Positions 23,944-43,541 of a DNA stretch of 64,000 bases are shown piece after piece (the stretch's first letter is position 1; every line of letters starts with the position of its first letter). The notes below the pieces were generated by a model. It made no database searches, was not told the origin of the DNA, and worked only from the letters and a program-made list of their open reading frames with translations. This DNA comes from Vitrella brassicaformis CCMP3155 (lineage: Eukaryota > Protista > Chromerida), in NCBI GenBank assembly GCA_001179505.1, contig CDMY01000562.1:186001-250000 (forward strand), written 5' to 3'. A program made the translations under genes and the position numbers.

Positions 23944-24243
23944 NNNNNNNNNNNNNNNNNNNNNNNNNNNNNNNNNNNNNNNNNNNNNNNNNNNNNNNNN
24001 NNNNNNNNNNNNNNNNNNNNNNNNNNNNNNNNNNNNNNNNNNNNNNNNNNNNNNNNNNNNNNNNNNNNNNNNNNNNNNNNNNNNNNNNNNNNNNNNNNNN
24101 NNNNNNNNNNNNNNNNNNNNNNNNNNNNNNNNNNNNNNNNNNNNNNNNNNNNNNNNNNNNNNNNNNNNNNNNNNNNNNNNNNNNNNNNNNNNNNNNNNNN
24201 NNNNNNNNNNNNNNNNNNNNNNNNNNNNNNNNNNNNNNNNNNN
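23944..24243. other. Assembly gap (300 N)
   Basis: Run of N following a G-rich tract. Confidence 1.
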
Positions 24244-33211: not shown

Positions 33212-33974
33212 GTGACCCGAAGAGAGGAGTCTGTATGTGTCCTCCTGGGGTGATGGACAACGAACAGGGTGGGGTACGGTGCATGCCTCTCGTCAGACAA
33301 CTCAACGTATAATGTGATCTCTTGACCACACATTGTTAACATTCAGTTGCACTCATTGCAATGGCCATGCACTCCCTCTCCCACAGACAGTCAGTCGTAT
33401 AGGACCACACACACACACCATCAATCAGCATACGTATGTACGGATCTGTATACACGGGTGTGCACACATGCATTATATAGAGATCTGCCGTCACGGTGCT
33501 GCGGGCGGTGTGTGGGGTGTGTGTGTGTATCATCACTGAGTTGGCGGTCTTTTTGTGTAGGTAGGTGTACGCAACTAGGGAGAGAGAGAGGGCGGGCGGG
33601 CGGGCGGGCGGGCGGGCAGCACAGAGAGAAGGCAAGTCATACGACCAACAGAAAGACAGACAGACAGTGGAGAGCTACCGTGGTGAGAAGAGCGTGTGTG
33701 TGGTGTACCAGCCATACCAGCCAGCCAGCCACACTCTTCCCCCCGTCTCGCTTCTGTCTGCTCTGCCTGCCCCTGCGCCGCCTTAGAAAACACACAGACC
33801 CCTCTTCTCACAACACCCACGTACACGCACAAACACACGTGTACATTCACCCATGTATCACCGCTGCCCCTTTCTATCTATCCGTCTACCTGCCTCTCTG
33901 TCTGTCTGTCTGTCTGTCTGTCTGTCCCCCCCCGGTGGATGGGCCGGGCGGGTGGTCTGAAGTTAGTGTGTGCT

Positions 33975-34630
33975 TCACATGAACATGGTGCGGCCTCTGC
34001 GCTTCAGAGCGTAGAGCACGTCCACGGCCGTCACGGTCTTGCGGTTGCCGTACTCGGTGTACACCACCTGAGCAGAAGGAAGGAAACACAGAGGAGGGTG
34101 GGTGCGTGAAGAGGTGAAGTGGAGTGCAGTGCAGTGCAGTGCAAATGGATGGATGGATGCACGGATAACTGACATCATGGCTTGGCTTACGGCGTCGCCG
34201 ATGACTTTCTGGAGGAAGTCTTTGAGTATGTTGCGCACCTCCTCGTACACCAGCCCGTTAATGCGCTTCACCCCGCCGCGACGTGCCAGGCCTGACCATG
34301 GATATATGGCCACACAACGCATGAAACGACGCACAGAGCACACTGTGGTGTATTCTGGTTGTTTATTGGTGGCGGAGTGTTGCATACGGCGGATGGCCGG
34401 CTTGGTGATGCCCGAGATGCAGTTGCGCGGCACCACATGGCGCTTGGTCACCTCTGCGGGGGGGGCAAACACACAGGCCACATCATCGACATGCATCAGC
34501 CAGTGCAAATACGGTTTCTTGTGGCATTCGTGCTCTCTTCTTGGTGCTTACTGCCGCCCTTCCCCACGCCCTTGCCCTTGCCGCCCATACGCGGGAGCGG
34601 CGTGCCGGGCTGTTCGATCTTCACTCTCAT
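33975..34630 (-). CDS. H4: Highly divergent histone H4 variant, 3 introns (34454-34551, 34292-34387, 34068-34190)
   Basis: Spliced: (MRVKIEQPGTPLPR)[98 protein letters not shown]. Start is at 34630 or 34588. Confidence 0.93.
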
Positions 34631-34956
34631 CCTCCTGTCCTTCAAGCGTCAACTTAAGAGGTCAGCCTGAGCACAGCAATGACTCCTCGACAGTAAGGGA
34701 TGCTGCAGCCGCTCAGCGCTTCGGTTACTCCTCATTCTTGCGCTTGCGACTTTGAGGGCGCCTCACTTTTTGATCAACGGGGGCCACTGGCAAGTGGGGG
34801 CTGAGCGAGACGGCGATCGGGGCGTCTTTTGCAGTTCTGCGTGGTCGTTGGCTGAGGAAGTGCGTGGCGGAAGTGGGGAGTGGGAAATATTGTGTTTGTT
34901 CCTGGCAAGACCGTTCCCCCTTCCCCTGAGAGACTATCACAGGTACAGCAGGACAG

Positions 34957-37900
34957 ATGGATGGTGCAGGTACACCGCTCTCCACAGCCTCTTTGCACTT
35001 CACGCAGATGGTCACCTCTTTCAATCGCGCGGCTGCGCCACCCAAAGCGGCCATCGTGATGATGGCCCTCCGGCGAGCGTCCAACATGCTCTCCCTTCCT
35101 CTGTTGCGCGGCATCGTGGTCCTCTGCCTGAACGAGGCAGCGGCCAAGCACGGGCACCACCACCACCCCGACGACTTTCCGACGTCTTGGTGGAACAGCT
35201 TCCTTGAGTTCCTTTCCTCGCTGTCGGTGCTGCAGTACATGACGCCAGTGCAGATGCTGATATGCGGTGCCATCATGACCGTCACTGGAGCCACCATGTG
35301 CTGCCTCGGGAGCCACCTGCAGAAGGCCGCCGGGCTCAACACCATGATCCCCCGGGATGGCACCTTCTTCGACCGACATGTGGGCTACATCCCCCGCATC
35401 CCCTGGAGGTGGTGGTGGGGCATGATCATCTACATCAGCGGCAACGCGGTCCACATGCTCGCACTCGCCTTCGCACCCGCCAGCGTCCTCAGCCCCATGA
35501 ACAGCGTGTCTCTCTTCTTCTCCGCCATCATCGGATCGGTAAGTTACTCACTCAGCCAGTCAGATGAGTGAGGCGGCACAGTACACATCTGTGTGTGGGT
35601 TTGGGGGTGGGTGGGTCCAGGTGATGCATGGGGAGCTGTTGGGCAGTCGGGAGTGGCTGTCCACGACGCTGATCGTCCTGGGTGTGGTCTCCTGCACCTA
35701 CGCGTCCGTCAACCCCTCTATCCACCGACACAAAAGCCTTCAGGAACAAGTAATCACGAACGAAGCAACCACTCTAAGCCATGTCCCACATCTCACATCT
35801 CACATCTCACATCTCTCTCCAGGTGGGTGCGGACTTCTTTGGCACGCCCGACCCCTGGTACGTGGCATACATGATCCTCCTCTTCGCCGGCATCCTCGGC
35901 TGTCTCGTCTGGGCCAACCACGTGGAGGCACACCACAGCCAGACACTCGAGAAGAAACTCGCACAAGAGCAGACCAAGAGGCACTCTGAACAACAGGCCA
36001 TTGCGGCAGAATCCGCTGCGGCAGCGGCCGACTTCCAAGAGTAATGAGTGAATGGCTGACATAACGCACAAGCCAGCCAGCACATATATGAGGCAAGGGA
36101 GAGTTCCGACTGTGTCTGTCTCTGTGTGTGTTGCAGGAGTGGTGCGCCTTGGGGCAATGGCGACGACCTGTCAACGTCTTTTGCGGCTGAGGCGGCAGTG
36201 TCAGGGGGGCCTCGGGTGCCCCATCCATCCCTCACCAAAGTGGCGCCCTCGGGAGAGGCGGAGCCCTCCAGGGCTGACGACACCGGTGCTGGTGTGCAGC
36301 TCGCCCCGGTGCCCAAACGGGCGTCGTCGCAGCGGTCAGTAGCCTAGCCTGGGGAGGGAGACAGACGACGCCACGCCCACACACTCCGCTGAGTCTCCTT
36401 GTCTCTCTCCCTCGGCATGTCTGTCTATCCATCGATCAGCCAGCGGAGCAACTTCCACCCCGTGGATGAGAATCAGCCGATGGACGTGTCTCGCCTGGCC
36501 CTCGAGCCAGAGGGCGTGCAGGAGGACCCCCAGTACGACCAGCAGCAGCAAGGCGACCTGCCGGAGGAGCAGCAGCCCCTGGTCAGTCACCAGGGCCACC
36601 CCGCCCAGCCGGGCATCGTGACACGCCCGCGAGACCAGGAGGTCATGCAGGAGGGCGGGGAAGCAGGAGTTGATGTGGAGAGGGGCGAGGGGGGACAGCA
36701 CAAGGAGCAAGGAGAGGGGGAGGACAAGGCGGAGGAGGAGACAGTGGGATGGCCACGGCAGCTCGGTGAGTGAGTTGTCTGTGTGTGTATGTGGGCAGTG
36801 GATAGATGGATGGACTGGACGAGGGAAGAACGTGTGTTTATGTCTGCAGGATTTGCGTATGGCTTCATAGCGGGCATGACGGGCTCCCAGACGGTGCTGG
36901 AGGTCAAACAGGCAGCGGCACTCATCGAGGTGACACTACACTGACTGCACCCAGACCGACAAAACCTGACCAATGAATGTCTTCGGTGAATGAATGTATT
37001 CCTGATTGGCTCTCAGCTGAGTTTCCGTGACCAGTCTGTGCTGTACGGCCCTGCCCTCTACTTCGCGTGTGTCGTCGTCTTCCTCTCCGCCACACTGCAG
37101 GCACCCACTCACACACTCATCCCATACACACACCACACATACCCATGGCCACATGGCAGCAATGCGTTCCCTCTGTCTGTATGTGTATGTGTATGTGTAT
37201 GTGTATGTGTGTCTCGTGCTGTGCTGTGGTGTGGTGTGGTGTCAGATCCACTACTGCAACCAGGGCATGATGCAGGGCGAGTCGACGGTGGTGCTGCCGT
37301 GCTACTACATCTCCTGGTGCGTCTTCGGCACTCTCGGCGGATTCGCAAAGTTCCACGAAATCGACGGCTTCGGGCCTAACCAAGTGGTCCTCTTCGTTGT
37401 CGGTCAGTCAGTCAATCACTCAGGGAGGAAGGGAGGGAGGGAGGGAGACAGGCATTCTTCTGTGGCTTCGCTCTGTGTTGCGTTCATGGGTGCGGGCGCA
37501 GGGTTCATCATCATTTTGCTGGGTGCCGTGCTGCTGTCGTTCGACTACAGTGTGGAAGAGCTGTGAGTGCATATGCATACCAAAGACAGACAGACAGAGA
37601 GAGAGAGAGAGAGAGGACAAGGGGGGTCGCTTCTGCTTTCGTTCAGGACATTCATCGGCCACGTCAGCGGGAAAATCGTGAGCCTCTCTCTCCCAGGATG
37701 GATGGATGGATTCAGCAAACGACATCGAGAGAGAGAAGAAAATCGCAATAACACGGCCTTGCCTTGATGTCTATGTGTGTGTGTGCATCCGTGTCTCTGT
37801 CTGCCATCAGCGCACTGGCGCCAACAAGCTTCAGGTCAGACACGCAGCCGGCAGGGAGACATGACAGGGAAATCGCTATTACCTGTCTGTCTGTCTGTCT

Positions 37901-39024
37901 GTCTGTGTATCTGATCATGGAACCAGGCGCTAGTGCCGATGGGTCTGATGCCGTTGCCGGTGCAAGTCGACAAGGAGAAGATGGTCGTCGAGTTCCAAAA
38001 CCAAAAGGAGGCAAAACTCGAGGCGCAATACAGAGGTACGTTACGTAAGGACATACGCACATCCGAACCGCATCGCATCGATGCATTGATTGATTGATTG
38101 GCTGGCTGATACATATCCGCTGCATTGCATGCAGAGTTCGTGGCATCGCTGCCCGAGGAGAAGGAAACCAAGCTCACCCGCAGCATGAGCATCTCTGACC
38201 CTCAAGACGCCAAAGGGGTCAGCCAGCCAGTCAGCCAACTTCGCCTGTTTCAGTCATAGTTTGATTGACATTTGTGTGTGTGGGGGGGGGGNNNNNNNNN
38301 NNNNNNNNNNNNNNNNNNNNNNNNNNNNNNNNNNNNNNNNNNNNNNNNNNNNNNNNNNNNNNNNNNNNNNNNNNNNNNNNNNNNNNNNNNNNNNNNNNNN
38401 NNNNNNNNNNNNNNNNNNNNNNNNNNNNNNNNNNNNNNNNNNNNNNNNNNNNNNNNNNNNNNNNNNNNNNNNNNNNNNNNNNNNNNNNNNNNNNNNNNNN
38501 NNNNNNNNNNNNNNNNNNNNNNNNNNNNNNNNNNNNNNNNNNNNNNNNNNNNNNNNNNNNNNNNNNNNNNNNNNNNNNNNNNNNNNNNNNNGCGTGTATG
38601 TCACTCACACCTATATAGGACCGTGCAATGGTCAAGGACATGACAGCCCAGGCGCGCATCAAGCTGTCCGTCGGTGACCGCAGCAAAATGTTCGGAAGCC
38701 TCAACAAAACAGAAGCGTACGTGTCGACAACAAGACGACCATGTGCACACACACGATGGACTGCTGATCTTGTGTGTCACGTATAGGTTGAAGTTCCACA
38801 GCCAGCAGCTTCCCCAGCCGCCCAAGGAGTTGGGTTACATCCACCTGGCCGACAAGCAGAAGGGCCACAAGATCCCCGGACTTGCCGACATCCAGTGGGG
38901 AGAGGCCACCCCCGCACAGCAGCAGCAGCAGCAGGAGGAGGGCCAGCAGCCCCAAGCGGCGCCACAGGGCCTCGAGGGCGCCCAGCAGCTTCAGGCGAGG
39001 CTGCTGCCGCCACCGCAGAAATGA
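34957..39024 (+). CDS. NIPA-family (DMT superfamily) Mg2+ transporter-like membrane protein, multi-exon, spans a gap
   Basis: WWWGMIIYISGNAVHMLALAFAPASVLSPMNSVSL..GELLG and HYCNQGMMQGESTVVLPCYY..TLGGFAKFHE match the NIPA pattern (WW.G..G..AF.FAP..V.PL; LN.AL..F....V.P.YY). Start may be 35086. Confidence 0.85.
38292..38591. other. Assembly gap (300 N) inside an intron of the NIPA gene
   Basis: N run after a poly-G tract. Confidence 1.
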
Positions 39025-40145: not shown

Positions 40146-42371
40146 TGGCGTACGCTGGCGATGACAGGGCTGCCGAATCGCTCTTCGAGCCTCGCCCAAG
40201 TGAGATCTCGCTCACCATGAGCTCTACTCGCTCTCGCACGCACATATCGGTCCCTGGTGCCACTTTCCTGCTGTGGCGATGGACGGATGGATGGATGTGC
40301 AGGTCCAGACACCAATCGTACCGCTGCTGCTGGTGCTGCTGCCGGGGCGCCAGGATCTGCCATCGACGCACCGCCAGCACCACTGTCGCTCCGCTCGCGC
40401 AGGACACGGAAGCCACAGGAGGTGAGATGGATTGGATGGATGGATGGCTGACCGTGTGTGGTGTGTGGTGTATGTGCAGGATGAGCGTGTACAGCGCACG
40501 GTTGACGAGCAGGCCCAGGCGATGCTGCCCGAAGGCCATCCTGCCATCGAAAGAGGTGCGTATGCGTTGATATCTCATTTCTGGTGTTCATCATCCTCTC
40601 TCTTGGTACTTGTCTGCCTGTCTGCCTGCCTCTTCATTCAATTGGATCCAGCTGAGCCTCAGAGGAAGGAGGGCGCCGCTGCCCGCATTCGCACTCTGGG
40701 AGGTGAGGAGAGAGGGGGGGGNNNNNNNNNNNNNNNNNNNNNNNNNNNNNNNNNNNNNNNNNNNNNNNNNNNNNNNNNNNNNNNNNNNNNNNNNNNNNNN
40801 NNNNNNNNNNNNNNNNNNNNNNNNNNNNNNNNNNNNNNNNNNNNNNNNNNNNNNNNNNNNNNNNNNNNNNNNNNNNNNNNNNNNNNNNNNNNNNNNNNNN
40901 NNNNNNNNNNNNNNNNNNNNNNNNNNNNNNNNNNNNNNNNNNNNNNNNNNNNNNNNNNNNNNNNNNNNNNNNNNNNNNNNNNNNNNNNNNNNNNNNNNNN
41001 NNNNNNNNNNNNNNNNNNNNNCCCGCATTCGCACTCTGGGAGGTGAGGAGAGAGGGGGGGGGGAGGGAGGGAGGGGGGGAGGGAGGGAGGTCGTGCGTTT
41101 TCATGTGCGTGGTCTGCGGTGCGTGTGTGTGTGTGTGGTGTGTGCAGGTGGTCTAGGAGGGTCGACGTGTTTTGAAGTCGCCGTAGCTGGGGAGATAGAG
41201 AACATACAGGTGAGTCCGCCGCAGCACATCGCGCCATCTGCCTTACCTTCCCGTCGTCCATCCATCCATCCATCCGTGTCATATGTGTATTGGAGCGAAG
41301 GGCTGTTTTGATGGGTGTTGGGTGTTGGGTGTGGTGTGATGGCAGTTGCCTGAGGGGAGCCGGTCTGCCCCTCTGGTGTGTCGATACCAACTCGTATACG
41401 GACCTGACTGGGCACTCGTCCAGGTAAGTCAGTAAGCCAACTGCACAACGATACGCACGAATGAATGAACACGCTGGCTGCCTCTCCGTGTGTGTGTGTG
41501 TGTGTGTGTGGAGGGTCCTGACTCAGGGGTCTCGCAGAGTGCGTGTGGTCCGTTGGGCGGGGGTGCGGGCGGCGCCTCTGTGGGGGCGCTCTCCGCCCTC
41601 AACCCCTTCTACGTCCCCACGCCGCCGTCGGTCGTTATCAACTTCCCATTCAACGCCGTCTTCAAAGTAAGAAAGGACGGCTAGGCTATGTGTGTGTAAG
41701 TTTGTGTGTCTGTCGATGGATGGATGGATGGATGGATGGCTGCAGGCGCAGAATGCGTTCGGGTGGCCGAGGGTGCTCGTGTGCATCTACGCTACAGACT
41801 GGTGGGTGAACTATCTGAGCGGATGGATGGATGAGAGGGGCTGGTCCCTCACTATCCACGCCCTCCCTCTACCCCTCCCTCCCTCCCTCCCTCTATCCAT
41901 CCATCCATCAGGTGCAACCGTCGCGTTATCAGGGGCTACTCGTCCGTCCACGTCCCCACTCAGCCAGGGAGGTACTGGACGACGCACTGCACTGCACCAC
42001 AACACACCACACCACACAATGATTGCAATTGACGGATGCACACTCTCCTCAGGCACGTGCGTTGGCTGCGTCTGTACTGCCCGGTGGCGTCCTCGTGGCT
42101 GTCGCGCTTCATGGGCTGGCTCACGGGCAACCGGGCGGAGTACATCGACCCAAAGACGGCAGCTCACAGCGAGGGCAGGGAAGGTACGCACATGTGTACG
42201 CCACCCCATTGTGTGCTGCGCCATGCCATGCCATGCCATGCCATGCCATTTGTGTGGGTGTGTGGGTGTTTGTGTGTCGTTTCAGTGGTGCGGGTGAGGA
42301 GCGGTGGTCGCGTCAAGGTGGTGCTCAACGTGCTGCTCAAAGACACCAAGCCGTTCAACTACTCGTTCTGA
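40146..42371 (+). CDS. B9D1: B9 domain protein 1 (ciliary transition zone) with N-terminal extension
   Basis: Spliced: FEVAVAGEIENIQ-LPE..CRYQLVYGPDWALVQ..VINFPFNAVFK-AQNAFGWPRVLVCIY..RGYSSVHVPTQPG-RH..FMGWLTGNRAEYIDPK..EGRE-VVRVRSGG..NVLLKD. Colinear with B9D1 as I recall it. 5' exons are less certain. Confidence 0.9.
40722..41021. other. Assembly gap (300 N), probably a false gap
   Basis: Sequence 40682-40721 is repeated immediately after the gap (41022-41061). Confidence 0.95.
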
Positions 42372-43241: not shown

Positions 43242-43541
43242 NNNNNNNNNNNNNNNNNNNNNNNNNNNNNNNNNNNNNNNNNNNNNNNNNNNNNNNNNNN
43301 NNNNNNNNNNNNNNNNNNNNNNNNNNNNNNNNNNNNNNNNNNNNNNNNNNNNNNNNNNNNNNNNNNNNNNNNNNNNNNNNNNNNNNNNNNNNNNNNNNNN
43401 NNNNNNNNNNNNNNNNNNNNNNNNNNNNNNNNNNNNNNNNNNNNNNNNNNNNNNNNNNNNNNNNNNNNNNNNNNNNNNNNNNNNNNNNNNNNNNNNNNNN
43501 NNNNNNNNNNNNNNNNNNNNNNNNNNNNNNNNNNNNNNNNN
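43242..43541. other. Assembly gap (300 N)
   Basis: N run in intergenic DNA. Confidence 1.

What the first reader, a model, noticed from the sequence alone, without database searches (positions are those of the whole stretch)
33975..34630. Highly divergent histone H4 variant lacking K20, the basic patch and the C-terminal GFGG
Seen: the core [18 protein letters not shown] is intact, but KRHRKVLRDNIQG becomes [12 protein letters not shown] (K20 lost, one residue deleted). Other changes include S47N, TEHAKRK to TEYGNRK and GRTLYGFGG to GRTMFM, with a possible 14-aa N-terminal extension and three introns. Established: H4 is among the most conserved proteins and true variants are rare. K16-K20 contacts the acidic patch and ISWI/Dot1/Sir3-type readers, and H4K20 methylation is linked to repair and compaction. 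Inference: a replication-independent variant building open or stage-specific nucleosomes (e.g. gamete, zoospore or centromeric partner).
Basis: partly seen in the sequence, partly recalled or inferred. Interest (0 to 1): 0.78.

Follow-up and report, generated by a model that had tools for sequence, protein, structure and literature searches.

The report
Divergent histone H4 variant in Vitrella
The alga Vitrella brassicaformis, a free-living relative of malaria parasites, has a normal histone H4 and also makes this spliced, evolutionarily maintained H4 variant, which lacks lysine 20 and the normal C-terminal end; such variants are rare for H4, and what this one does is untested.

Summary
On the minus strand, 34630-33975, a four-exon gene with GT-AG introns of 98, 96 and 123 nt encodes a 112-aa histone H4. 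It is the annotated Vitrella brassicaformis protein CEM23183.1/A0A0G4G447.

- **Real and expressed:** Contigs from three public runs (two studies) and two further transcript contigs carry the predicted splice joints.
- **A true variant:** Vitrella also has a canonical 103-aa H4 (Vbra_20047, A0A0G4EA45). This protein is 66% identical to it.
- **What it keeps and loses:** The GK-repeat lysines and K16-R17-H18 remain. R3, R19/K20, S47, H75-A76-K/R77 (now YGN) and F100-G102 are gone.
- **A second copy:** A paralogue (P0147, 116 aa) on another contig was already flagged by this scan (s1-221717). It shares the N-terminal extension, the K20 loss and TEYGN.
- **Under selection:** dN/dS between the two is 0.20, so this is not a pseudogene.
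- **Restricted:** Three large protein searches gave nothing closer than canonical H4, so the pair appears Vitrella-restricted.

Replication independence, nucleosome incorporation and stage specificity remain untested. I class it as a new, undescribed member of the small set of H4 variants, of moderate interest.

The parts
34631..34780 (-). 5' UTR (minimum extent)
   Evidence: Transcript contig L001 aligns at 100% from 34780 downwards. Logan RNA contigs reach 34757.
34649..34735 (-). Upstream ORF of 28 codons inside the 5' UTR
   Evidence: Listed by the ORF listing. It lies within transcript L001. Function untested.
34589..34630 (-). 14-codon N-terminal extension (M1-R14) ahead of the second in-frame ATG at 34588
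   Evidence: ATG1 has A at -3. A homologous extension with V3, I5, P8, T10, P11 and P13 invariant is present in paralogue P0147, which has no later Met to start from.
34552..34630 (-). Exon 1 coding part (extension and GK-repeat tail)
34454..34551 (-). Intron 1, 98 nt, GT-AG, phase 1 in codon 27
   Evidence: The joint 34552|34453 is present in contigs of X1, X2 and X5, and in L001 and L006.
34388..34453 (-). Exon 2 ([21 protein letters not shown]; site of the R19/K20 loss)
34292..34387 (-). Intron 2, 96 nt, GT-AG, phase 1 in codon 49
   Evidence: The joint is present in X1, X2, X5, L001 and L006.
34191..34291 (-). Exon 3 (helix 1 end, loop 1, most of helix 2)
34068..34190 (-). Intron 3, 123 nt, GT-AG, phase 0, stop-free in frame; sometimes retained
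   Evidence: Spliced in X1, X2, X5 and L006. Retained in L001 (product P0001, 153 aa) and in one X5 contig.
33975..34067 (-). Exon 4 coding part (TEYGNRK, helix 3, truncated end GRTMFM, stop TGA at 33977-33975)
   Evidence: Transcripts run collinearly through the stop with no further joint.
33604..33974 (-). 3' UTR (minimum extent), containing a (GACA)n microsatellite at about 33884-33936
   Evidence: L001 runs to 33604. No Rfam histone stem-loop at E<=10. The repeat was skipped by read laying.

Best explanation
This is one of two paralogous, lineage-restricted histone H4 variant genes of Vitrella brassicaformis (here v1; v2 = P0147). They sit beside a conventional H4 gene (Vbra_20047).

**Shown**
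- v1 is transcribed and all three introns are removed.
- The reading frame has been held under purifying selection since the v1/v2 duplication.
- The histone fold and the H4 DNA-binding residues are intact.

**Inferred mechanism**
- **Assembly:** v1 pairs with H3 and enters nucleosomes as an H4 replacement.
- **Tail:** it keeps acetylatable GK lysines and K16-R17-H18, but lacks R3 and R19/K20. It cannot carry H4K20 methylation, and should bind the acidic patch and ISWI/Dot1/Sir3-type readers more weakly.
- **N-terminus:** a conserved 13-14-aa extension with a P-x-T-P motif replaces the SGRG end. This is a possible proline-directed phosphorylation site.
- **H2B-H4 bundle and loop 2:** H75Y, A76G and K/R77N alter the H2B-H4 four-helix-bundle and loop-2 DNA-contact region.
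- **C-terminus:** in v1 only, it is rebuilt and three residues shorter (L97M, Y98F, G99M, no F100-G102). This removes part of the strand that pairs with the H2A docking domain and binds Asf1.
- **Net prediction:** a K20-less nucleosome that is less compacting and holds H2A-H2B less tightly.
For: **H4 identity**
- E = 5e-37 to solved H4 chains, with about 70% identity over the alignment.
- The AlphaFold2 model has the three histone-fold helices at 44-53, 56-88 and 96-105. All top Foldseek PDB matches are nucleosomal H4.

**Expression and splicing**
- L001 is 100% identical to the window with introns 1 and 2 removed.
- All three joints are present in contigs of X1 and X2 (study P1) and X5 (study P3). 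X6 is collinear, as expected for DNA.
- L006 from ERR558152 is fully spliced.
- The exact 112-aa product is in MMETSP and EukProt.

**Canonical H4 coexists**
- A0A0G4EA45/Vbra_20047 was read from supplement file 3 of PMC7996758.
- v1 is 65/99 identical to it overall and 72% in the fold.

**Selection**
- Against v2: dN 0.26, dS 1.28, dN/dS 0.20. The fold gives 0.14 and the tail 0.36.
- Bootstrap pN/pS is 0.25-0.50 and never reached 1 in 2000 replicates.

**Shared variant signature**
- 13 states are shared by v1 and v2 against the canonical H4.
- They include the loss of R19, K20V/T, L22P, H75Y, A76G, R77N, M84V, V87L and Q93R.
- Separately, both proteins carry the homologous N-terminal extension.
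- v1 and v2 group together with SH-aLRT 94.

**Precedent for the C-terminal effects**
- The H4G paper states that the last five H4 residues form a beta-sheet with H2A.
- It also reports that H4G did not form nucleosomes in vitro and did not bind Asf1, that deletion of residues 97-102 is lethal in yeast, and that Y98H blocks octamer formation (PMC6895281).
Against: - No protein-level evidence exists for v1. I found no mass-spectrometry peptide, localisation or ChIP data.
- Contig depths cannot rank its expression against canonical H4.
- v1 has more private changes than v2 (8 versus 2; relative-rate p = 0.058), so constraint on v1 may have relaxed recently.
- The pairwise dN/dS averages both lineages, and dS is near saturation.
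- A precedent warns against assuming function. Fungal H4E is conserved and nuclear, yet shows no phenotype (PMC10878826).
- The structural consequences are inferred from residue identities and published work on other H4s. They were not modelled in an octamer here.
Confidence: 0.6

Rival explanations
1. Expressed but functionally dispensable or decaying duplicate. Under this reading v2 is the working variant, and v1 is a younger-looking copy drifting towards loss. The C-terminal truncation would be a first disabling lesion.
For: - v1 has 8 private substitutions against 2 for v2 (p = 0.058) and the longest terminal branch (0.51 versus 0.23).
- It alone lost the C-terminal residues and S47.
- An in-frame intron-3-retaining mRNA is readily seen.
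- Fungal H4E shows that a conserved H4 variant can lack any detectable phenotype.
Against: - The ORF, all six splice sites and every DNA-contacting Arg/Lys of the fold except position 77 are intact.
- Fold dN/dS is 0.14.
- GC3 is 0.89, with no sign of codon decay.
- Fully spliced mRNA is found in two independent studies.
Confidence: 0.15
2. Non-nucleosomal H4-like protein. It would fold with H3 or another histone-fold partner but work outside bulk nucleosomes. Examples are a chaperone-bound pool or a nucleolar factor, as proposed for human H4G, which does not form nucleosomes in vitro.
For: - The C-terminal truncation and Y98F/G99M resemble the H4G lesion. In H4G that lesion goes with no Asf1 binding and no in-vitro nucleosome (PMC6895281).
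- H75Y/A76G/K77N sit at the H2B-H4 interface (established nucleosome structure; inference).
Against: - v2 shares the TEYGN signature but keeps a full-length C-terminus, so the family as a whole looks nucleosome-competent.
- The residues corresponding to R35, R36, R39, R40, R45, R78, K79 and R92 are all kept.
Confidence: 0.15
3. A second replication-coupled bulk H4 isoform. It would be deposited genome-wide in S phase alongside Vbra_20047, not as a specialised replacement variant.
For: - Gene structure therefore does not separate the two classes here.
- No cell-cycle data exist.
Against: - The gene is solitary and shares a bidirectional region with a Mg2+-transporter gene.
- No histone stem-loop hit at E<=10 behind v1 or v2.
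- 34% divergence from canonical H4, including the loss of K20, would be extraordinary for a bulk H4.
Confidence: 0.08
4. It is simply the organism's ordinary and only H4 type.
For: None after testing.
Against: Vitrella encodes a 103-aa canonical H4, Vbra_20047/A0A0G4EA45, with SGRG, K20 and GFGG. It is 96/103 identical to a generic protist H4.
Confidence: 0.01

Closest known systems
Canonical histone H4 of Vitrella brassicaformis (Vbra_20047, A0A0G4EA45_VITBC)
   Same: Same fold and the same [18 protein letters not shown] block. K5/K8/K12/K16-type GK lysines, R17, H18, R23, K31, R35-R45, K79, K91 and R92 are all kept. Identity is 66% overall and 72% in the fold.
   Different: - v1 has a 14-aa N-terminal extension.
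- It has no S1/R3 and no R19/K20.
- Substitutions are L22P, S47N, R67G and H75Y/A76G/R77N.
- The C-terminus is GRTMFM in place of GRTIYGFGG.
Vitrella paralogue v2 (P0147, CEM13700.1/A0A0G4FJC1; L002:6001-6585; earlier scan note s1-221717)
   Same: - 74% identical.
- Shares the extension (M-V/R-x-I-x-x-P-x-T-P-x-P), VTKRHxVPR, [24 protein letters not shown], and a four-exon structure.
- Also present in MMETSP.
   Different: - v2 keeps S47 and a full-length C-terminus (GRTLYGYAD).
- It has fewer private changes.
- None of its three intron positions coincides with any of v1's three.
Human H4G (hominid-specific H4 variant, PMC6895281)
   Same: A rare H4 variant with a truncated C-terminus and changes in the tail and helices 2-3. 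The C-terminal strand that pairs with H2A and binds Asf1 is affected.
   Different: - H4G is 85% identical to H4, lies in a histone cluster and loses five residues.
- v1 is 66% identical, solitary, loses three residues and carries an N-terminal extension.
- The two arose independently.
Ascomycete H4E (PMC10878826)
   Same: A lineage-wide H4 variant whose gene has its own intron/exon pattern. It differs mainly in the N- and C-terminal regions and in Lys/Arg distribution. It is nuclear and interacts with H3.
   Different: It is fungal and unrelated in origin. No phenotype was found. v1 also changes the H2B-contact region (TEYGN).
Trypanosomatid H4.V and Oryza H4.V (PMC13052989, PMC12400321, bioRxiv 10.1101/2023.07.31.551207)
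   Same: Single-copy H4 variants located away from canonical histone arrays (abstracts).
   Different: They arose independently in unrelated lineages. I did not compare their sequences directly here.
Divergent and elongated H4 variants of dinoflagellates and Perkinsus (Marinov and Lynch 2015, PMC4751559)
   Same: They belong to the same larger group (Myzozoa), where H4 is unusually prone to divergent, often N-terminally elongated variants.
   Different: No dinoflagellate or perkinsid protein scored closer to v1/v2 than canonical H4 does. That paper used Vitrella H4 only as a comparison taxon and does not describe these variants.

Membership tests
Histone H4 | Significant full-length sequence similarity to bona fide H4, better than to any other histone class | tested here: met
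   phmmer against PDB gave 94 hits, and all 60 listed are H4 chains (one row also carries an H2A label). The best E-value is 4.8e-37, aligned over residues 15-111. All database relatives are H4.
Histone H4 | Histone fold (helix 1 - loop - long helix 2 - loop - helix 3) preceded by a disordered basic tail | tested here: met
   The AlphaFold2 model has helices at 44-53, 56-88 and 96-105, with residues 1-38 below pLDDT 50. The top 50 Foldseek PDB hits are nucleosomal H4 chains.
Histone H4 | Invariant [19 protein letters not shown] block and the RKTVT / YALKR motifs | tested here: met
   All are present and invariant in alignment A1.
Histone H4 | Pfam histone-fold domain above the curated cut-off | tested here: met
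   PF15511 (the model that also labels the canonical H4s in the search tables) scores 28.3 bits against a cut-off of 28.1. This is only just above threshold. PF00125 was not reported for this protein.
Canonical (bulk) H4 | N-terminal SGRGK, the complete basic patch K16-R17-H18-R19-K20, and the C-terminal LYGFGG | tested here: not met
   SGRG is absent. R19/K20 is replaced by a single V, and the protein ends GRTMFM.
Histone variant (non-allelic paralogue of a core histone) | Coexists with a canonical gene of the same class in the same genome | tested here: met
   Canonical Vbra_20047/A0A0G4EA45 was read in the supplement of PMC7996758. The variant's accessions are different.
Histone variant (non-allelic paralogue of a core histone) | Expressed, and maintained by purifying selection | tested here: met
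   Spliced transcripts appear in runs from two studies plus L001 and L006. dN/dS against the paralogue is 0.20.
Histone variant (non-allelic paralogue of a core histone) | Replication-independent expression and a polyadenylated mRNA without a histone stem-loop | tested here: inconclusive
No Rfam histone stem-loop at E<=10 in 33300-34900, or behind v2. No poly(A) tail is visible on the contigs, and there are no cell-cycle data.
Histone variant (non-allelic paralogue of a core histone) | Incorporation into nucleosomes with distinct localisation or properties | not testable with these tools
   This needs histone mass spectrometry, reconstitution or ChIP.

The most novel reading that the evidence does not exclude
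v1 and v2 define a specialised, K20-less nucleosome type in a chromerid. The conserved P-x-T-P extension would act as a regulatory phospho-switch. The TEYGN change and the truncated C-terminus would make H2A-H2B easy to evict. This nucleosome type would be deployed at particular loci or life stages, such as sporangium or zoospore formation. That would make Vitrella a tractable free-living model for how the most conserved histone diversified in Myzozoa, the lineage leading to dinoflagellates and apicomplexans.
Probability: 0.2. Interest if true: 0.65.

Novelty: new member of a known kind. Interest (0 to 1): 0.5.

Why it matters
H4 is the slowest-evolving core histone, and only a handful of functional H4 variants are known: trypanosomatid H4.V, hominid H4G, ascomycete H4E and Oryza H4.V. 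Here a photosynthetic relative of Apicomplexa carries two expressed, selectively maintained H4 variants.

Both have lost R3 and R19/K20, altered the H2B-contact region and gained a conserved N-terminal extension. One of them has also lost part of the C-terminal strand that docks H2A and binds Asf1.

These are natural experiments on residues that chromatin biologists mutate by hand: K20 methylation, the tail basic patch, K77 and Y98. They also bear on how histones diversified in the lineage that includes dinoflagellates.

The practical value is a clear set of testable predictions. The limitation is that the protein is already in public databases, labelled only 'Histone H4', and nothing about its function is shown.

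Tried and rejected
- **Pfam on the read-through ORF.** A scan of the 177-aa ORF that reads through the introns gave nothing. The spliced product was needed.
- **First word search.** It used the read-through ORF, and the ranking was useless. Tandem-duplicated H4 annotations scored as high as the protein itself.
- **Orthologue outside Vitrella.** I searched three ways and found none closer than canonical H4.
  - In the single-protein word search, v1 itself scored 237 bits, v2 162, and canonical H4 about 125-131.
  - The 1.84-billion-representative HMMER search gave a best single-stretch hit of 131 bits.
  - In the v1+v2 profile search, v2 and v1 scored 238 and 229, and the next single-domain hit scored 156.
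  - No Chromera-labelled protein appeared.
- **P0236.** This K20-less H4 with an N-terminal extension, from SRR28036163, joins v1+v2 in the tree at SH-aLRT 86. It scores no better than canonical H4, and its organism is unknown. I do not call it an orthologue.
- **P0172.** This is another K20-less, C-terminally truncated environmental H4. It does not group with v1/v2.
- **Shared regulatory sequence.** A comparison of the v1 and v2 flanks gave only chance-level short matches.
- **Introner-type repeats.** The six introns match only microsatellites elsewhere.
- **Histone stem-loop.** No Rfam hit behind either gene.
- **Literature.** No paper mentions either accession.
- **Canonical H4 gene DNA.** I could not fetch it. 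Its protein is known to me only from a paper's supplement, so branch-specific codon models and an intron comparison with the canonical gene were not possible.
- **Expression level.** The reads tool returned only assembled contigs, so the expression of v1, v2 and the canonical gene could not be compared.
Full report
**What is in the sequence**

The finding lies on the minus strand. Reading 34760-33900 in reverse complement and assembling the exons gives a four-exon coding sequence: 34630-34552, 34453-34388, 34291-34191 and 34067-33975.

The three GT-AG introns are 98, 96 and 123 nt. Their phases are 1, 1 and 0, at codon 27, at codon 49 and between codons 82 and 83.

The 112-aa product is letter-for-letter the protein P0002. 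Public sources hold it as CEM23183.1 / A0A0G4G447, 'Histone H4' of Vitrella brassicaformis CCMP3155. It is also present in the MMETSP and EukProt transcriptome-derived sets. The window is therefore part of Vitrella contig CDMY01000562.1.

- The [18 protein letters not shown] block is intact.
- The tail reads [12 protein letters not shown], one residue shorter than canonical.
- S47N is present.
- TEYGNRK replaces TEHA(K/R)RK.
- The protein ends GRTMFM.

One nuance needs correcting. The equivalents of K16, R17 and H18 survive, so only the R19-K20 half of the basic patch is lost. R3 and the SGRG N-terminus are also gone. The GK-repeat lysines corresponding to K5, K8 and K12 remain.

**It is an H4 by every test available**

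phmmer against all PDB chains returns only H4. The best E-value is 4.8e-37, over residues 15-111.

An AlphaFold2 model built on a small alignment has a disordered stretch at residues 1-38. The three histone-fold helices follow at 44-53, 56-88 and 96-105. The top 50 Foldseek hits are all H4 chains of nucleosome or chaperone complexes.

Pfam's PF15511 model also labels the canonical H4s in the search tables. It is met only just, at 28.3 bits against a 28.1 cut-off.

**It is expressed and spliced as predicted**

Several independent assemblies support the gene model.
- **L001.** This 983-nt contig from JGI sample 3300017148 is 100% identical to the window from 34780 to 33604. Introns 1 and 2 are removed exactly at the predicted borders, and intron 3 is retained.
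- **Public runs X1, X2 and X5.** Logan contigs of X1 and X2 (study P1) and X5 (study P3) each carry all three joints. The skipped lengths are 98, 96 and 123 nt, with ends CT..AC on the plus strand, which is GT..AG on the minus strand.
- **Control and retained form.** X6 is collinear with the genome, as expected for DNA. X5 also holds an unspliced intron-3 contig.
- **L006.** This contig from ERR558152 contains the fully spliced 339-nt ORF.

No run shows a substitution or indel relative to the window. Transcripts run straight through the TGA with no further splice. The short C-terminus is therefore real.

Because only assembled contigs were served, nothing can be said about expression level.

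**The N-terminal extension is real**

The mRNA starts at or upstream of 34780. It contains a 28-codon upstream ORF (34735-34649), and then ATG1 at 34630 with A at -3. The second in-frame ATG at 34588 has C at -3.

The paralogue gives stronger evidence. It has a homologous extension and no internal Met from which a canonical-length protein could start. V3, I5, P8, T10, P11 and P13 are invariant between the two. Both extensions contain P-x-T-P, the minimal consensus of proline-directed (MAPK-type) kinases. That reading is my inference from general knowledge and is untested.

**A canonical H4 exists, so this is a variant**

The proteomics supplement of PMC7996758 (file 3) prints UniProt A0A0G4EA45_VITBC, gene Vbra_20047. 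It is a 103-aa H4 beginning [29 protein letters not shown] and ending GRTIYGFGG. Its accession differs from those of the two variants.

- It is 96/103 identical to that generic H4.
- The window's protein is 65/99 identical to it (66%), and 72% identical from GITKP onwards.

**A second variant gene and evidence of selection**

The word search with the spliced protein found P0147 (116 aa; CEM13700.1 / A0A0G4FJC1). It lies on contig CDMY01000447.1, fetched as L002:6001-6585.

That note (s1-221717) reads 'Divergent histone H4 variant with a rebuilt tail and no K20-equivalent'. I take the two to be the same gene.

The two proteins are 74% identical. Thirteen aligned positions hold a state shared by both variants but not by the canonical H4. 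One search lists the shared changes:
- A15T
- deletion of R19
- K20 to V or T
- L22P
- T54 to V or I
- H75Y, A76G and R77N
- M84V, V87L and Q93R

Both proteins also carry the homologous N-terminal extension. They group together with SH-aLRT 94 in a 110-sequence H4 tree.

| Region compared (v1 versus v2) | dN/dS |
|---|---|
| Whole alignment (dN 0.26, dS 1.28) | 0.20 |
| Fold | 0.14 |
| Tail | 0.36 |

These are Nei-Gojobori estimates on the codon alignment. In 2000 codon bootstraps pN/pS stayed within 0.25-0.50 and never reached 1. This removes the pseudogene reading as a long-term state.

Two caveats apply. dS is near saturation, and the estimate averages both lineages. v1 has 8 private changes against 2 for v2 (relative-rate p = 0.058). 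It alone has S47N, R67G and the truncated end, so it is the more derived copy and could be under weaker constraint.

**Distribution**

Three searches found nothing closer to v1/v2 than canonical H4.

| Search | Variant scores (bits) | Closest other proteins (bits) |
|---|---|---|
| Single-protein word search, 5.8 billion proteins | v1 itself 237, v2 162 | canonical H4 about 125-131 |
| Exhaustive HMMER, 1.84 billion representatives | not applicable | best single-stretch hit 131 |
| v1+v2 profile search | v2 238, v1 229 | next single-domain hit 156 (a canonical-type H4), canonical bulk 148-150 |

No Chromera-labelled protein appeared. The pair is therefore Vitrella-restricted as far as these collections show.

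Two unidentified K20-less H4s turned up.
- **P0236** (SRR28036163) has an N-terminal extension, AKRFKNFRRDCITG and KRRGRT. It joins v1+v2 at SH-aLRT 86.
- **P0172** (JGI 3300062821) has MRHVEWRNSIKG and a truncated end. It does not group with them.

With 103 alignment columns, I treat the P0236 link as unresolved.

**Context**

No other histone gene lies in the window or near v2.

v1 sits head-to-head with a NIPA-type Mg2+-transporter gene, and a TPR protein gene lies downstream. The contig L006 joins the spliced transcripts of both genes through their overlapping 5' ends.

No Rfam histone stem-loop is detected within about 670 nt downstream of v1, or behind v2, at E<=10. Neither introns nor this negative result establishes replication independence.

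**How it most likely works (inferred)**

The following residue roles come from published nucleosome work.
- K20 is the H4 methylation site.
- Residues 16-24 contact the acidic patch and readers such as ISWI, Dot1 and Sir3.
- Loop 2 residues K77 to K79 touch DNA.
- H75 and its neighbours lie in the H2B-H4 four-helix bundle.
- According to the H4G paper (PMC6895281), the last five residues form a beta-sheet with H2A and are needed for Asf1 binding. That paper also reports that deletion of 97-102 is lethal in yeast and that Y98H blocks octamer formation.

On that basis, v1 should form H3-v1 pairs normally, because its H3-facing and DNA-binding residues are conserved. The resulting nucleosomes would differ in three ways:
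- They cannot be K20-methylated.
- They engage neighbouring acidic patches and tail readers less well.
- They hold H2A-H2B less firmly.

v2 would share the first two properties but not the C-terminal weakening.

None of this was tested here. Human H4G offers a competing outcome, because it failed to form nucleosomes in vitro. Fungal H4E offers another, because it is conserved yet shows no phenotype (PMC10878826).

**Comparison with known systems and novelty**

Described H4 variants include hominid H4G, ascomycete H4E, trypanosomatid H4.V and Oryza H4.V. Marinov and Lynch reported divergent, often elongated H4s in dinoflagellates and Perkinsus. They used Vitrella only as a comparison taxon and do not discuss these proteins (PMC4751559).

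No paper in the searchable library mentions either variant accession.

The Vitrella pair is thus an undescribed, independently evolved member of a known but small class. The proteins themselves are already in public databases under the bare label 'Histone H4'.

**Verdict**

- The variant status is established by a coexisting canonical gene, expression, splicing and purifying selection.
- Replication independence, chromatin incorporation and any stage-specific or centromeric role remain open.

Interest is moderate at 0.5. It is a clean, testable natural H4 variant in an evolutionarily informative alga, but functional evidence is wholly lacking.

Noticed in passing
window 34068-34551 (three introns) versus L002:6125-6528 (three introns): The two variant paralogues each have three introns, but none of the six positions coincides. 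v1 has them in codon 27, in codon 49 and after codon 82. v2 has them at the G of GITKP, between N and F of KNFLEN, and between V and D of TAVDVL. This suggests an intron-poor ancestor with independent intron gain, or extensive intron turnover. The introns are not repeated elements.
   Followed up: partly
window 34068-34190 and 34292-34387: Introns 2 (96 nt) and 3 (123 nt) are multiples of three and stop-free in frame. An intron-3-retaining mRNA exists (L001; one X5 contig). It would encode a 153-aa protein (P0001) with 41 extra residues inside helix 2. This may be chance, an assembly of pre-mRNA, or regulated retention.
   Followed up: partly
window 34649-34735 (minus strand): A 28-codon upstream ORF lies inside the variant's 5' UTR and ends 18 nt before the main ATG. 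It may affect translation. The v2 upstream region also has ATGs, but its transcript start is unknown.
   Followed up: no
window 34552-35540; L006: The variant gene and the divergently oriented NIPA-type Mg2+-transporter gene have overlapping 5' transcript ends. One RNA contig (ERR558152) joins both spliced mRNAs. A plus-strand GT..AG intron at 34943-35004 removes the ATG at 34957, which a naive ORF scan would take as the transporter's start.
   Followed up: partly
L003 (SRR28036163) and L004 (JGI 3300062821): Two unidentified organisms encode other K20-less H4 proteins. P0236 has an N-terminal extension and KRRGRT. P0172 has MRHVEWRNSIKG and a truncated end, NNCTLYR. Loss of K20, with or without C-terminal shortening, may recur among protist H4 variants.
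   Followed up: partly
window 33884-33936 and about 33600-33620: (GACA)n and (GCGGGC)n microsatellites lie inside the 3' UTR. They break the Logan RNA contigs. Short motifs in intron 3 (34145-34167) and the 3' UTR (33648-33668) also occur in many unrelated contigs.
   Followed up: no
window 23944-24243, 38292-38591, 40722-41021, 43242-43541: There are four runs of exactly 300 N. These are scaffold gaps in the assembly.
   Followed up: no
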